Source: Diadema antillarum
Taxonomy: Eukaryota
Reading direction: 5' to 3'
Assembly (NCBI RefSeq): GCF_040938485.1
Contig: NW_027271914.1
Coordinates: forward strand, 496,001-560,000
Length of the DNA: 64,000 bases
Below are positions 3,343 through 9,300 of this stretch, piece by piece (the first letter of the stretch is position 1; each line of letters begins with the position of its first letter). The position numbers and the translations under genes were made by a program. Under the pieces are notes generated by a model. It was not told the DNA's origin, did no database searches, and worked only from the letters and a program-made list of their open reading frames with translations.

Positions 3343-6300
3343 AATGAAATTCAGCTCATGCTTAACATGGGTGTGGATCCGTCCCGCATCATCTTTGCCA
3401 ATCCCTGCAAGCAGCGGTCGCATCTCAAGTTCGCTGCCACCAACAGCGTATCCCTCATGACCTTTGACAATGAGGCTGAGCTCCACAAGATCAAGAAGAT
3501 CTACCCAGAAGCAAAGTGAGTCACTACCACCACATACATGTACTTGCCAACTGTCCCTTATTAATTGGGACTGTCCCTATTTCCATCCCAGTAAAAGAGA
3601 GAAAATTTTTAATCATGTGTCCGTATTTTTTGTGGAAATGTGGGGGTGTTAATGTGCTGGAAATTTAGGAATGTCCCTATTTTGAAAGATATTCTCCTCA
3701 TTTGTCCATATTTCTTAGGTTTCAGGGTTGGCAGGTATGCCACCAGCATTTCAGTTGTGATTGGAGGATGGTGTTTGACCTTTATAGAAAAGGGATATCC
3801 TTATTGCCATGCTGACTAATAGCCTCTGAGCCTGTGAAATTAAAAAGTAAGGATATTCTGTATGTAGTCAGTTTCTTTGTTTATAAAAGAAAGGGGACCT
3901 ACATGTAAATTTTAACTGCATGTTTATTTAAGCTGAATTTAAGCTGAATTATGTATTCATTTTGGAGCAAGCGCCATGAGCGCCTGACTTGGCGGATACC
4001 GGCGCTATACAAGACTTCATCATCTTCATCATCATGATCATGTTATTAAAAAGACAGTTTTTTTTTCATACTAAGTGTACTCCATATCTTAAATTTTCTT
4101 TTAGTTTTTTCCCTTCATTTCAAGGCAGATAGGACAAACCATGTTACTTTTGTTCTGAGAAATGTCTGTGAATCCTGTTGGTGTATAGAAGGCATAGTAG
4201 GCAGTAGAACAGTCAAAACCATAAGAGTCAAAGCCTTAGTGGTCATGATGTCAAACCATGTAGTGGAATAACGGAACAGTTGCGAATAGTTTTAAACTAT
4301 ATGGACTAATCAGCGTGATCATGTCGGCATTAATGCTGTTTGTTCTGCGTGCAACATTTCCTGTGAGTCATGTGATGGCACAGCTGCATCCTGCCACTTC
4401 TTCACAAATTTCCTCTCAATTTGTTGGAAAATAACAGTAATTCCTTACTCTGAAAAAAAAAATAGGGAAGATAATTGGTGTAGCATGAGTTTTATTGTTT
4501 CCTTCACAAGATTTGATAGCAACAGGACTAGTCTTCTCCTACCATGTGATAGAAATGTGGTCGTGCATATCTTTTACTTAAAAGCAGTGGTAGGCTAGTA
4601 GAGATATGAGTTGAGAAATTACCCCTGCCCTTTTCAAGAAGAATCTGTCAGTTTAACATCAAGCCGTTCACCAAATACTCAGTATTACTATGTAGCCCTT
4701 GTGCTCAGGGGTCAAAGAATCCCCATTTTATACTTGTATCATATTACTACTTTGCAAGACTAAGGCACATAGGACAGTTGATATGCAACATGCAAAAGCC
4801 AAAGGGGTGACCAAAAGAAACTATGCCATTTTTGGCATCCTTCTCCCCCCTCCAATCCGTGATGAAAGCTTACTGTATAAAAACAGTCAAGATTTTATGA
4901 CATTACAAGTCCATATTTGGAGGTGCATTCAACAGTCTCCATGATATTGTAGTAGACCGCATGATCACAGAAATATTTTAATGCAGGCCTGTTTGAATGT
5001 CTGGACAAGCACATTCTAAAGCTTCTCTGATTGTGAAATTATTTTTTCCTCTTGGGATGCGAGTGCATACTCTCCTGCTCAGCATTCGAACAGACTTGTT
5101 GTAGTTACAAGGTCTGTATATTTACTGTATTCTGTCTAGACTGATTTTTCGTCGCAAAAATAGTTTGGGTCATTCACTTCATGGAATTAAGCCTGCAGCA
5201 TGCATTTACACTTGTCCATAGAGCTAGTATCGATGTGAATTCCACCTGGCTTCATTCACATCCCGCCCTATTGATAGGTGTACTTAAGGATGTTCTAATG
5301 TTACATTTTTGACCCCCTGTAGGCTTGTGCTCCGCATTCTGACCGACGACTCCACAGCCCAGTGCCAGCTGGGACTCAAGTTTGGCTGTCATCCCCGCCA
5401 CGCCCCCGCCCTCCTCCGCATCGCTCAGGATCTCGAGCTCAACGTCGTCGGCGTCAGGTGAGTGGCATCTCTCTCTGAAGTATTTTCCGTCATCACGCCG
5501 ATCTTCTTATAATGTCTATTCTCATTGCCGTTCATTTGCCATGTCATATTCTACCATATTTATGAGTGCTATTACCTTTAAGGTCAGGAAATTTGATGAA
5601 AAAAAAAATGCAGATTATTTGATATGAATGGTACTCTTTCTCTTTGAGAGAACATATTTGCATTTCACTTATTTATTTCTGTACCTAATTGGTGCTCGCA
5701 CACATGTCTTCATGGTTAGGAGAGGAGGAATCTCATTCATCACAGCAAATAGTTTAACTGGTATTACAACAGGTCATGTCAAGCATGCATAAGTTTCTTC
5801 ACAAATGTGCGTGATGGAGAAACATCGTGTAATAGCTTTTGACAGTACAAAGAACGTTTCTTGGAACAAATTCCGTGGTAAAGATTGACGCTCATAAAAG
5901 ATATTTACACAGTGCATCTGATAGCTATGATGACTAATTCACTTGCCGCTCTGAAATGCCTCGTTTGCATGTGTGGTCGAGAAGTGTAAAAACCTGGTTT
6001 TTCTGAGCTATCGTTATGAATTAGATTGATGGTGTATGCTGCACAAAATGCCTTCTGTGAAAAAAAAGGACTAATTTCCCGAGTTTGTTTGAGCTGTTAT
6101 CACCTTGACTGGGTTTTGTGTTCGTACCAAATCAAAAAGTTATAAAGATCTACTTGATTGCAAATCGTTTTAAACCAAAATTTCACCATTTTTATTGATG
6201 ATACTGAAGTGTTGGATTTGGCATTTATTATCCTCGGTAGCTTCCACGTCGGTAGTGGATGCCGTGATGCCCTGACCTATCTGGAGTCCATCCGCAATGC

Positions 6301-9300
6301 TCGCGAGATCTTTGACTTCGCCGCCGACCTTGGCTACAACATGAGCCTCCTGGACATCGGAGGGGGATTCCCCGGGCAAGCCTCGGCACCCATCACATTC
6401 GAAGAGGTAAGACTGATGTGAAGACTAACTTATATTTTCAAATACAGTGGAATTAATTGTATCTGTTTTTAAGGAAATGTGTGCATTGCAAAAAAGTATT
6501 CTGTAACAGGCCAAATCTATCAAGACTTGAACAAGCAAGATCAGTTTGTCAACCTGTTGTTTGTTGGAACTAGAAATTCATGTACTACTAGGTTAACTGT
6601 GTGAAATATCACTATTCAAGGAAGCAGTTGGTCAGTTTGTACCCAAAAGCATATTACCCATGTGACAAGCAGTTGGTAGACTGCATCTGAAAATTAAAAG
6701 AAGTTCAAATATCTAAAATGCATGAAGGTATAAACATTGGCGTTTGTTGATTCTTTGTTCAAAAGGTGCAGTAGCTGTGATGAATGACTCACTTGCCGCT
6801 CTGAAATGCCTCAGTGGTTTTGTGTGGTCAAAAAGTGAAAACCTGGTTTCTCTGAGCTATTGTTACAAGTTGCTGTTGCATGAAGACATTGCCTTGTACA
6901 TTCCATTAAACAGTGACAGAGGTATGTACTGAACTCCTGTGGGGGAGGGGGTATACAGGGAGAATCTTTTCCCCATTGTTACTCTGGATGTTGCTTTCTA
7001 CAGTTGTTGAATGATGCTCATGGCAGTAAATAATTGATATAGCTTATTTGTGGTGGTCAACAGGTGTTAGTGATTTACATAATGTTGAATCTAGCATCAA
7101 TTTGGCAGAGGGCGTCTACAACCTAGAATATAGCCAATGATGGGAGAGCTCATGGCAATCATGTTCATCTTACGTGCATGTATGTAGATGGCATCAGTCA
7201 TCAACAGGGCCCTCGACGAGAGCTTCCCCGTGGGATGCGGGGTCCGTATCATCGCCGAACCGGGCCGCTTCTATGTGGCCTCGGCCGTCACCGTGATGGT
7301 TAATGTCACCACCAAGCGGCTGGTGGCCAGGGACATCCCAACCTACAAGGTTGCTGAGAGCGATGGTAAGTTGAGATTTCTACCTTATAGTTTCGCTCAC
7401 ACTGTGGCTCTCGTATCAGAAATTTCCATTAGTGGGACCACTGTGGTGCTGTCGTCCAAGCTCAGGACTTTAAAGCAAATGAATACTGTATACGCCGAAT
7501 ATTTTGCAAGGTTTTTATTTTCCCAAATTTCGCAAGTCAGGTGCTGTTCGTGAAATTAAAGACACGCAAAGATATTGACTCTGATCCCGATGTGAATGTG
7601 ACGTACGCGTGTACACTTGTTCGCTCAGTACAGGACTCCACGATCACGAATTTAGCCACTCGCGAAATCGTCGGGAATTCTTGATTCGCGAAAATTTAGA
7701 CCCGCAAAATATGTGGCTTATACAGTAAATTGCAGAAAGCTTTTGTATCAGGCCACTCCATTAAAACTTCAACATGCAGGATCATTTTGTTGTAAAACTA
7801 GAAACATTGACCGCATGAAACATTTTTTTTTTTTTTTTTCGTGGCATGATAACTTCCACGAATTGCTACTGGCATTCAATGCTTTATATGGACAAGCACT
7901 TTCACATGCATTTTACTCGCACGAATCTTGGCTCACAAAATTCTAGAAGCAGTCGGTTGATTTGTTCCTAAAGTATTTTACCCATCCGACAAGCAATTTG
8001 ATAGAATACATCTGAAAATTAGGAAGAAGTTCAAGTATCTAAAATGCCAAAGGTAGTACTGAGTAACTATGACGTTTGTTGCTTGTTTGTATAGAAGATG
8101 CAATAGCTATGATGAATGACTCACTTGCCGCTCTGAAATGCCTCGGTGGTTGTGTGTGGTCAAAAAGTGAAAACCTGGTTTCTCTGAGCTATTGTTACAA
8201 GTTGCTTCTTCCTTGCTGTCATCTAAGACTTTGCCTTGTACGTGCCATTAAACAGTGAGGGAAGTATAATACTGAACTCTCATCAGACGATAGGAGTGTT
8301 ACGAGTTATGATTATATTCCACATACTAAGAATGTTGCAATAGGATTGGTCCAGAGCTGATCACGTGATGAAGCGTAGTTTTGCCCATCACATCACATGA
8401 GAAGAAAAGTTCGTTACACTCTATGTTGATAGTCCCTTTTGTTTCGCTGATCTCCACACAGTCCTAATGCAAGATGAGTATGCACGAAATAAAAGCGCAT
8501 TGCACTGTCGACTATCATGTGACCTAGGTCACTTGATAGTACACAGTGCAACGCACCTTCACTTCGGTGCCGCGCAGTGCGCGCAGCAAATTCATTGTTT
8601 TGTCATCTACGCGCACACGTAGCCTAAGCCCTAAGGATACCTAAAGACAGCTAAAACGGTTTCAGATGTGGAATAAAATGGGAATTTCTAGGACCCTAGA
8701 TATGGAATATAAAGCAAATAATCAACTTTTAGTTTCAGGCAATGAGACAAACTATCACTTCCTCGGCGATCTGAATGTGTACGCTATCTTTCCTCAGCTG
8801 CGCTTCGGAAAGAAAGCTACATCCAGACTGCCTCGGAAGTGATAGTTTGTACCATCACCTTCACCAACGTTGATTATTTGCTCACTATCAGTGAGAGAGA
8901 ACAGTGAAGTTTTAGACTTGTGCCCACTTGTATTGCAACAGGGATGTCACCCCATTTGCTGTCCCTGTGTACCCATTCTCTGTGTGTTTGTACCAGACGA
9001 TTGATAGAGCGTATTGATTCTATTATCTATAGACATCGTGGCAAACAGCGTCGCCCCAAGCAAGAAGGACGAGCCAGCCTTCATGTATTATGTCAACGAT
9101 GGCGTCTACGGCTCCTTCAACTGCCTCCTCTTCGACCACGCCTCGGTGGAGCCGGTCCTTCTCAACGTGAGCTTCCTTTTCTCACTCTACTTCCCATTCA
9201 AAAACTAGAAAAGCACTCACAGAGTGCAGACCTCTGCCAAGCAGCTCACTTCCACCCATATACGTGTACACCGAAACTGGCCCAATTTTCCAATAATGAT

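What the first reader, a model, noticed from the sequence alone, without database searches (positions are those of the whole stretch)
5934..6006. Both snoRNA guides point at adjacent sites near the 5' end of 28S rRNA (helix 11 region)
The rRNA sequence is recalled from the conserved metazoan 28S 5' domain (human ...AGAAACUAACCAGGAUUCCCUCAGUAACGGCGAGUGAAC...), not read from this window. The D' guide UUCACUUGCCG pairs with CGGCGAGUGAA for 10-11 contiguous bp (one G-U), with a mismatch 2 nt from box D'. The +5 rule then predicts 2'-O-methylation of the second G of ACGGCG (about G91, human numbering). The D guide contains CCUGGUU, complementary to AACCAGG about 20 nt upstream; CCUGG-UUUCU also fits AGAAA...CCAGG with a 4-nt bulge. 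The order is antiparallel-colinear, as expected for a double guide on neighbouring sites. I know of no 2'-O-methylation this far 5' in human (first sites around A398/A400) or yeast (A649). Inference: either a lineage-specific modification of the H11 loop, or a chaperone snoRNA for 28S domain I folding, analogous in role to yeast snR190.
Basis: inference. Interest (0 to 1): 0.75.

Follow-up and report, generated by a model that had tools for sequence, protein, structure and literature searches.

The report
Intronic snoRNA aimed at 28S G89
This is one copy of a multi-copy box C/D snoRNA sitting in introns of the ornithine decarboxylase gene. One of its two guides fits the animal's own 28S rRNA very well and predicts a ribose methylation not mapped in the model organisms checked, while the second guide is too weak to call.

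Summary
Window 5934-6006 is the body of a canonical box C/D snoRNA (5920-6012, + strand): perfect C, D' and D boxes and a 6-bp terminal stem. It lies in an intron of an ornithine decarboxylase (ODC) gene. The assembly holds 10 copies. Three lie in consecutive ODC introns here, three in a 94-96% identical ODC locus, and two each at two other places; the one read lies in a TRAP-alpha/SSR1-like gene.

The species' own 28S reads AGCGGCGAGUGAA, not AACGG, so the reported mismatch disappears. The duplex is 13 contiguous bp with one G-U, starting next to box D'. It predicts Gm89, in the GGCGA loop of a small domain I hairpin. It is the best target among rRNAs and U1/U2/U4/U5/U6 for every paralog.

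The D guide claim is weak. It gives only 7 Watson-Crick bp (28S 67-73; 8-9 bp in the SSR1-locus copies, register shifted by 1 nt). As a guide this is no better than chance, though its position next to the D' target is nominally unusual (p about 0.01-0.06).

No expression or methylation data could be obtained. No Nm at this G appears in the fly, plant-centred (with human and yeast columns) or planarian lists read. Verdict: new member of a known kind, modest interest.

The parts
5920..6012 (+). Box C/D snoRNA, copy 1 (93 nt), the subject of the finding
   Evidence: Sequence read. Weak generic C/D matches in Rfam span exactly 5919-6013. C/D architecture scan against shuffles. Ten family copies in the assembly.
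5920..5925 (+). 5' strand of the terminal stem (GAUAGC), pairs with 6007-6012 (GCUAUC)
   Evidence: Among paralogs the outer G-C pair becomes A-U (copy 3) or G.U (copy 2). The SSR1-locus copies have a different but still complementary stem (alignment A2).
5927..5933 (+). Box C (AUGAUGA)
   Evidence: UGAUGA is invariant in all copies.
5938..5950 (+). D' antisense element UUCACUUGCCGCU. It pairs with own 28S nt 85-97, and the 5th nt upstream of D' (C5946) faces G89.
   Evidence: CACUUGCCGCU is invariant in all 10 copies.
5951..5954 (+). Box D' (CUGA)
   Evidence: invariant together with the following AAUGC.
5982..5987 (+). Possible degenerate box C' (AAGUGU here, AAGUGA in the other paralogs); assignment uncertain
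   Evidence: AAGUG is invariant in A2. An alternative C' would be UGUGGU at 5974-5979. Inference only.
5993..5999 (+). Conserved core of the D-side antisense region (CCUGGUU), complementary to 28S nt 67-73 (AACCAGG)
   Evidence: It is the only Watson-Crick match of 7 bp or more to 18S or 28S that all paralogs share. It extends to 8-9 bp in the SSR1-locus copies.
6003..6006 (+). Box D (CUGA)
6770..6861 (+). Paralog copy 2, in the next ODC intron
8102..8193 (+). Paralog copy 3, in the following ODC intron
5323..5457 (+). ODC exon upstream of the host intron (intron 5458-6240, GT..AG)
   Evidence: Splice sites read. Pfam PF02784 profile positions 106-157.
6241..6406 (+). ODC exon downstream of the host intron (SFHVGSGC motif)
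   Evidence: Pfam PF02784 positions 158-216, E 3e-14.
7188..7349 (+). Next ODC exon, between the introns holding copies 2 and 3
   Evidence: Pfam PF02784 positions 217-247.

Best explanation
The stretch is the guide-bearing body of a genuine intronic box C/D snoRNA, made from the spliced-out ODC intron (inferred from position and sense orientation). It belongs to a family with five kinds of copy: three in ODC introns and two beside a TRAP-alpha/SSR1-like exon.

As a fibrillarin snoRNP, its D' antisense element pairs with nt 85-97 of the animal's own 28S rRNA and directs 2'-O-methylation of G89. G89 is the second nucleotide of the GGCGA loop of the small hairpin G86-U94 / C87-G93, which lies inside the 76-80/99-103 stem of domain I.

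The D-side element has no convincing methylation target. Its conserved CCUGGUU core may add accessory pairing to 28S 67-73/75, just upstream on the same strand. That would help dock the snoRNP, but this is not shown.

Shown: the boxes, the stem, the copies, the host genes, the complementarity and its rank. Inferred: expression, snoRNP assembly and the methylation itself.
For: Architecture. Perfect C, D' and D boxes and a 6-bp stem. There are 2 such hits in the window against 0.01 expected.

Family. There are 10 copies in the assembly: the ODC introns here, a 94-96% identical second ODC locus, and two copies each on C627 and C18. The C627 pair lies downstream of an exon matching TRAP-alpha (PDB 8b6l_E, E 3e-8). 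Copies lie on the sense strand of the host wherever the host was read. Boxes and the D' guide are invariant while the spacer and flanks diverge, and the terminal stem shows G-C / G.U / A-U changes.

Target. The own 28S reads AGCGGCGAGUGAA in all five rDNA units checked. The duplex is 13 contiguous bp with one G-U, starting at the nucleotide next to D'. It ranks 1 of 2019 windows of rRNA plus U2, U5 and U6 for every paralog, at -23 to -28.9 kcal/mol. The SSR1-locus copies extend the pairing to 28S 98-101 across a 1-nt bulge. Guide shuffles reach the observed score in 6 of 500 trials for copy 1 and about 20 of 500 for the others. The best duplex of the D' guides with U1, U2, U4, U5 or U6 is only -13 kcal/mol.

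Structure. The Rfam LSU model places G89 in a 5-nt hairpin loop. It also shows that the own G86 replaces the consensus A86, and guide C5949 matches that G.
Against: There is no evidence of expression. The only run holding the snoRNA words gave a contig (5930-6099) that runs on into the intron, so it is not a mature RNA.

There are no methylation data. No orthologue from another species could be read, so covariation between guide and target is untested.

The shuffle p-value is moderate (0.01-0.05) because the guide is GC-rich and the rRNA is GC-rich.

Between the two ODC loci the snoRNA copies (96-99% identical) are not clearly better kept than the introns (94-96%).

No Nm is mapped at this G in fly, plants, planarian, human or yeast, so the site would be lineage-specific.
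Confidence: 0.6

Rival explanations
1. Double methylation guide. D' guides Gm89, and the D element guides a second Nm about 21-25 nt upstream in 28S (A68 in the ODC copies; A64 in the alternative register).
For: AACCAGG (28S 67-73) is the only Watson-Crick match of 7 bp or more to 18S or 28S shared by all paralogs. It grows to 9 and 8 bp in the two SSR1-locus copies through different letters. A match of 7 bp or more within 30 nt of the D' target arises in 1.1-1.6% of guide shuffles for ODC copies (6% for the SSR1-locus copy). ODC copies 2 and 3 also pair 8 bp from position 1 with 28S 60-67 (read).
Against: 7 bp is below what working guides normally show. By RNAduplex the site ranks 14th to 145th of 2019 windows, and best-hit shuffles give p about 0.3. 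The SSR1-locus copies carry one extra U, so position 5 faces A67 rather than A68. In both cases the target sits at the first or second pair of the helix, with positions 1-3 unpaired. The competing registers and rival sites (18S 368-380, 28S about 505 and about 2300) score as well or better.
Confidence: 0.1
2. Placeholder or chaperone snoRNA without methylation, like snR190 in role. The two antisense elements clamp 28S 60-75 and 85-101, on either side of the 5' strand of the 76-80/99-103 stem, and delay folding of this part of domain I.
For: Two conserved complementarities lie on neighbouring stretches. The upstream rRNA segment pairs with the D element and the downstream one with the D' element, so the 9-11-nt linker would end near the C'/D' motif on both sides (geometry inferred). 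The D' duplex covers the whole 86-94 hairpin, and in the SSR1-locus copies also the 3' strand 98-101. No Nm is mapped at this G in any list read.
Against: The D' element is a textbook guide: a perfect CUGA and pairing from position 1 through 13, which is expected to methylate. snR190's domain I site is a different segment that pairs with 5.8S (PMC8536666). The D-side pairing is weak. Nothing here tests function.
Confidence: 0.12
3. A real snoRNA whose 28S match is fortuitous. It would be an orphan, or it would act on another RNA (tRNA, mRNA, a minor snRNA). One version of this is a drifted SNORD103/85-type guide for 18S.
For: The shuffle p is only 0.01-0.05. Rfam aligns the guide CACUUGCC with the SNORD103 consensus guide (16.8 bits). 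The own 18S has GGCAAGU facing guide positions 4-10.
Against: The 18S match is 7 bp with three unpaired positions next to D'. SNORD103 scores far below its gathering score of 45 bits. The 28S duplex is the top hit for all paralogs and lies in a universally conserved core segment. The SSR1-locus copies lengthen it.
Confidence: 0.12
4. Not a functional RNA: decaying snoRNA pseudogenes or a small repeat that happens to keep box-like motifs.
For: No expression data exist. The copies lie 228-800 nt from the 3' splice site rather than the roughly 70-80 nt typical of vertebrates. Copies 2 and 3 share duplicated flanks.
Against: All 10 copies keep the perfect C box, D' guide and D' box, and every copy read keeps a perfect D box and a pairing terminal stem, with compensating changes. 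Copies lie in sense orientation in the two unrelated host genes read.
Confidence: 0.05

Closest known systems
Canonical intronic box C/D methylation-guide snoRNAs (SNORD class; multi-copy families spread over consecutive introns of one host gene)
   Same: C, D', D boxes and a terminal stem. A 12-13-bp antisense element abuts D'. Sense-strand intronic location, with one copy per intron and several paralogs.
   Different: No Rfam family reaches its threshold (best is SNORD11B at 20 bits against 50). The predicted site, 28S G89, is absent from the Nm lists read. The hosts are ODC and a TRAP-alpha/SSR1-like gene. That typical hosts are ribosomal-protein or translation genes is my own knowledge, not tested here.
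SNORD103/SNORD85 (Rfam RF00188)
   Same: The guide shares CACUUGCC directly after box C, and the overall layout aligns end to end.
   Different: It scores 16.8 bits against a gathering score of 45. The letters next to D' differ (GCU here, CCUCA in the consensus). As a result the 18S site pairs only 7 bp while 28S 85-97 pairs 13 bp. A pattern search for a SNORD103-type guide in this genome found one place without stem or Rfam support.
Yeast snR190 (chaperone box C/D snoRNA)
   Different: snR190 bridges H73 (domain V) and a 15-nt domain I sequence that pairs with 5.8S, and its predicted G2395 is not methylated (PMC8536666). Here both elements face one local stem-loop (28S 60-101), the second is only 7-9 bp, and nothing argues against methylation.
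Accessory ('extra') base-pairing of box C/D snoRNAs to pre-rRNA next to the guide duplex (van Nues et al. 2011, EMBO J; cited from my own knowledge, not read here)
   Same: A short conserved complementarity to rRNA close to the methylation target could stabilise docking.
   Different: Here it would use the second (D-side) antisense region rather than a stretch next to the active guide. It is untested.
Unnamed C/D snoRNA on metagenome contig L018:178-255 (-)
   Same: Its guide CACUCGCCGUU|CUGA puts the same G of AACGGCGAGUG at position 5. It has an 8-bp terminal stem and lies in a cluster with other C/D-like hits.
   Different: The guide sits before box D, not D'. The RNA is 78 nt. The organism and its rRNA are unknown. 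It was found by searching for the guide motif, so only its stem and its neighbours are independent observations.

Membership tests
Box C/D snoRNA (2'-O-methylation guide) | Box C (RUGAUGA) near the 5' end and box D (CUGA) near the 3' end | tested here: met
   AUGAUGA at 5927-5933 and CUGA at 6003-6006. The C box is kept in all 10 copies, and box D in every copy read.
Box C/D snoRNA (2'-O-methylation guide) | Short terminal stem bringing C and D together | tested here: met
   GAUAGC/GCUAUC, 6 bp. Paralogs show G-C, G.U and A-U at the outer pair and a different complementary stem in the SSR1-locus copies. The count is 2 against 0.01 expected in shuffles.
Box C/D snoRNA (2'-O-methylation guide) | Internal D' and C' boxes | tested here: inconclusive
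   D' is a perfect CUGA (5951-5954). C' is degenerate, either AAGUGU/AAGUGA or UGUGGU.
Box C/D snoRNA (2'-O-methylation guide) | Antisense element of about 10 bp or more ending next to D or D', with the target facing the 5th nucleotide | tested here: met
   D' element: 13 bp (one G-U) with own 28S 85-97, giving G89. D element: only 7 bp, so not met for that side.
Box C/D snoRNA (2'-O-methylation guide) | Stable processed RNA bound by fibrillarin, NOP56, NOP58 and SNU13; methyl group present at the target | not testable with these tools
   No RNA run holds it. The one contig over it runs on into the intron.
SNORD103/SNORD85 (RF00188) | Score at or above the Rfam gathering threshold (45 bits), with a guide for the 18S site | tested here: not met
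   16.8 bits, E 1.6. The 18S pairing is 7 bp with positions 1-3 unpaired.
snR190-type chaperone snoRNA | Long antisense elements to distant 25S domains (H73, and the 5.8S-pairing segment of domain I), with no methylation at the predicted site | tested here: not met
   Both complementarities lie within 28S 60-101, and none was found to domain V. Lack of methylation is not testable here. The definition is taken from PMC8536666.

The most novel reading that the evidence does not exclude
This lineage has a 2'-O-methylated G in the GGCGA loop of the domain I hairpin (28S G89), a site unmodified in the eukaryotes whose maps were read. It is installed by a snoRNA that docks with both antisense regions on one local stem-loop: 28S 67-75 through the D side and 85-101 through the D' side. 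The snoRNP would therefore also hold the 76-80/99-103 helix open during early pre-60S folding.
Probability: 0.25. Interest if true: 0.5.

Novelty: new member of a known kind. Interest (0 to 1): 0.3.

Why it matters
If Gm89 exists, it adds a lineage-specific modification in the 5' domain of 28S. Among animals, the fly and planarian maps read and the human column of the plant-centred table show none at this G, and plants have only Um44/Um48 nearby. It would also give a simple case for studying how new guide sites arise and spread by intron-to-intron duplication. The paired complementarities around one small stem-loop could serve as a test of accessory pairing or local chaperoning by a modification snoRNP. 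Otherwise it is an ordinary, well-formed snoRNA family that should be annotated in this genome.

Tried and rejected
Rfam. No family reached gathering score at the locus. The best matches were generic C/D hits with E of about 1.

Expression. Both run searches found no RNA holder. Read laying on 5200-8400 showed a low-depth contig, 5930-6099, that continues into the intron. It also showed that a relative about 90% identical ('organism B') holds the locus, but its letters over the snoRNA were not listed, so conservation there could not be read.

Orthologues through the host gene. An ODC exon ORF found only distant exon fragments (65% identity or less). Six ODC loci fetched from them (L014, L015, L038-L041) contain no snoRNA with this guide.

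Metagenome scan for C box plus guide plus CUGA. It gave 16 hits. One is a believable snoRNA (L018). The others inspected look like chance matches: L016 is bacterial by its RNase P and tRNA, and none of the rest shows a box D with a terminal stem.

Literature string searches for the guide letters and for 'Gm88..Gm93' returned only unrelated papers. A search for snoRNA plus ornithine decarboxylase host gene gave nothing relevant by title and abstract.

A SNORD103-type guide in this genome. One pattern hit (L037) has no terminal stem and no Rfam support, so it was dropped.

snRNA targets. U1, U2, U4, U5 and U6 give no duplex better than -13 kcal/mol.

Two genome-search runs for the LSU model failed on the server side. 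rDNA was reached through 5.8S instead.

Full report
**What is at the coordinates**

The + strand of 5920-6012 reads as a textbook box C/D snoRNA:
- stem GAUAGC (5920-5925)
- box C AUGAUGA (5927-5933)
- a 17-nt spacer ending in UUCACUUGCCGCU (5938-5950)
- box D' CUGA (5951-5954)
- a 48-nt middle part
- box D CUGA (6003-6006)
- stem GCUAUC (6007-6012)

The finding's coordinates, 5934-6006, are the part between box C and the end of box D. Rfam has no family for it. At gathering thresholds the window yields only two U5 snRNA genes. With relaxed thresholds, several unrelated C/D families align end to end to 5919-6013 at E of about 1-2, which reflects the generic architecture only.

A simple scan asked for RUGAUGA, then CUGA 55-115 nt on, then a perfect 6-bp flanking stem. 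It finds two places in the 64-kb window (this one and copy 3) against a mean of 0.01 in 200 shuffles.

**Host gene and family**

The element lies in a GT..AG intron (5458-6240) of an ornithine decarboxylase gene on the same strand. The flanking exons are 5323-5457 and 6241-6406. Exons match Pfam PF02784 in consecutive profile segments: 55-106, 106-157, 158-216 and 217-247.

The next two introns carry paralogs at 6770-6861 and 8102-8193.

A pattern for box C plus guide plus D' finds 10 places in the 1.75-Gb assembly:
- the three copies here
- three in a second ODC locus on contig C7, which is 94-96% identical including introns (a haplotig or a recent duplicate)
- two each on contigs C627 and C18

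On C627 the two copies lie downstream of, and on the same strand as, an exon that matches translocon-associated protein subunit alpha (PDB 8b6l_E, E 3e-8). I did not read the flanks of the C18 pair. The family therefore lies in sense orientation in two unrelated host genes. There are five distinct kinds of copy if C7 and C18 are counted as duplicates of the other two loci.

Across these copies the following are invariant: box C, the D' guide CACUUGCCGCU, D' plus the next five letters, a UGUGG and an AAGUG block, and CCUGGUU. Box D is perfect in every copy read. The spacer and flanks diverge (alignments A1 and A2; parsing).

The terminal stem changes in a compensating way. The outer pair is G-C in copy 1, G.U in copy 2 and A-U in copy 3. 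The SSR1-locus copies have a different stem, GUGC/GCAU. This is what a functional snoRNA family looks like.

**The species' own rRNA**

I took a full rDNA unit from this genome through its 5.8S genes:
- 28S = L006:742-4546
- 18S = L005:5105-6920
- 5.8S = L005:7293-7448

The 28S 5' region reads ...GAAACUAACCAGGAUUCCCCCAGUAGCGGCGAGUGAAGUGGGAA.... The five rDNA units checked are identical here. The relevant difference from the recalled sequence is G instead of A at nt 86.

**D' guide**

Against the own 28S, the D' element pairs without interruption from the nucleotide next to box D' for 13 bp. That is 28S 85-97 (AGCGGCGAGUGAA), with one G-U pair (U5944 with G91). The 5th nucleotide upstream of D' (C5946) faces G89.

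Only this copy has the 13th pair; all other copies have 12 bp. The SSR1-locus copies add four more pairs (CCAC with 28S 98-101) across a 1-nt bulge.

By RNAduplex the site ranks first of 2019 windows of 18S, 5.8S, 28S, U2, U5 and U6 for every paralog, at -23 to -28.9 kcal/mol. The best duplex of the D' guides with U1, U2, U4, U5 or U6 is -13 kcal/mol.

Shuffling the guide and asking for an equally good anchored duplex anywhere in the rRNAs, spacers, U2, U5 and U6 succeeds in 6 of 500 trials for copy 1 and about 20 of 500 for the others. The match alone is therefore significant but not overwhelming. Its weight comes from four things together: the rank, the invariance across paralogs, the extension in the SSR1-locus copies, and the location in a universally conserved core segment.

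In the Rfam eukaryotic LSU structure, nt 76-80 pair with 99-103. Inside that stem, nt 86-87 pair with 93-94, leaving the loop G88 G89 C90 G91 A92. G89 is the second loop nucleotide. The consensus has an A86-U94 pair where this species has G86.U94.

**D guide**

The D-side region (…AAAAACCUGGUUUUU|CUGA) pairs with 28S 67-73 (AACCAGG) for 7 Watson-Crick bp. Position 5 faces A68, and positions 1-3 are essentially unpaired.

As a methylation guide this is not distinguishable from chance:
- Anchored-duplex shuffles give p of about 0.3.
- The site ranks 14th to 145th by RNAduplex.
- It falls behind GC-rich stretches at 28S about 505 and about 2300, and behind 18S 368-380.

The SSR1-locus copies have one extra U before box D, so position 5 faces A67 there. 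A conserved methylation site would be expected to keep the register. ODC copies 2 and 3 (UUUCU) have a second register of 8 bp on 28S 60-67. In copy 1 it would need letters of box D itself.

Three observations keep the pairing alive as something other than a guide:
- AACCAGG is the only Watson-Crick match of 7 bp or more to 18S or 28S that all paralogs share.
- The SSR1-locus copies lengthen it to 9 and 8 bp through different letters (AACCAGGAU, AACCAGGA).
- A match of 7 bp or more within 30 nt of the D' target arises in only 1.1-1.6% of shuffles for ODC copies, though in 6% for the SSR1-locus copy. This test was chosen after seeing the data.

I rate accessory docking on 28S 67-75 at roughly even odds, and a real second methylation at about one in ten.

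**What is missing**

No public run on record as RNA holds the locus. The one small run that held the snoRNA's words gave a depth-2 contig, 5930-6099, that continues into the intron. It does not show a processed RNA.

A relative about 90% identical holds the whole locus, but its letters over the snoRNA were not reported. Distant ODC loci (six contigs) carry no such snoRNA. Covariation between guide and target across species therefore remains untested.

**Comparison with what is known**

- In Drosophila the first 28S Nm is Gm789 (PMC11014333, Table 1).
- A table centred on the plant sites, with human, yeast and other columns, lists 25S Cm40, Um44, Um48 and Um144, then Am369, Um378 and Gm399. It has nothing at the equivalent of G89 (PMC11542601, Table 2).
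- The planarian map starts at 28S Um181 among the sites quoted (PMC11649923).

A Gm here would therefore be lineage-specific. Methylation within the first 100 nt of the large-subunit rRNA is not unprecedented, because plants have it.

A metagenome scan for the guide motif turned up one compact C/D snoRNA, L018:178-255 (-). It has an 8-bp stem CAUUGUCA/UGACAAUG and lies in a cluster with three other C/D-like hits. Its box-D guide CACUCGCCGUU places the same G at position 5. This hints that the site may be targeted in another, unknown eukaryote. Only the stem and the neighbours are independent of how I searched.

Here both complementarities face one local stem-loop, and the D' element is a canonical guide. 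The resemblance is in possible role only.

**Verdict**

This is a real, well-formed, unannotated box C/D snoRNA family. Its D' guide very probably targets 28S G89. The 'both guides' framing is only half right. I class it as a new member of a known kind, of modest interest, with a testable side question about local two-point docking.

Noticed in passing
window 24459-24577 (-) and 28038-28156 (-): Two U5 spliceosomal snRNA genes 3.6 kb apart (Rfam RF00020, 89 and 92 bits). They differ in the 3' stem-loop.
   Followed up: no
window 7447-7767, 7875-7981 and 8303-8400: Very high-copy interspersed repeat inside the third ODC intron. Summed contig depth reaches 10^4-10^5 in runs of the related 'organism B', and hundreds of contigs break at 7483 and 7727. 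It is probably a SINE-like element.
   Followed up: no
L034 (G000:C627:1201500-1211400), minus strand; snoRNA copies near + coordinates 4544 and 7323; exon 8821-9006: Two further paralogs of the snoRNA lie downstream of a TRAP-alpha/SSR1-like exon on the same strand. Their D' guide reaches 28S 98-101, and their D-side element pairs 8-9 bp with 28S 67-75. Contig C18 holds a second pair.
   Followed up: partly
L008, L010, L011 (G000:C7:866234-872082): A second ODC locus, 94-96% identical including introns, carries all three snoRNA copies. It is a haplotig or a recent duplicate. Its copy 1 has C instead of U at the 13th guide position, so that pair is not conserved.
   Followed up: partly
L018:178-255 (-), metagenome contig Ga0302161_10017840: A compact 78-nt box C/D snoRNA with an 8-bp terminal stem. 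Its box-D guide CACUCGCCGUU targets the same large-subunit G. It lies in a cluster with C/D-like hits at 332-397, 885-953 and 1573-1649 on the same strand (weak matches to ceN114/SNORD81, SNORD43 and SNORD87).
   Followed up: partly
L006:827 (28S nt 86): This species has G where the Rfam eukaryotic LSU consensus has A. This turns the A-U pair of the small hairpin into G.U, and the snoRNA guide matches the G.
   Followed up: partly
window 5940-5944 and 5982-5986: The invariant AAGUG block after the spacer is complementary to CACUU of the D' guide. It could form a 5-bp internal helix in the free RNA or be part of box C'. This is unresolved.
   Followed up: no
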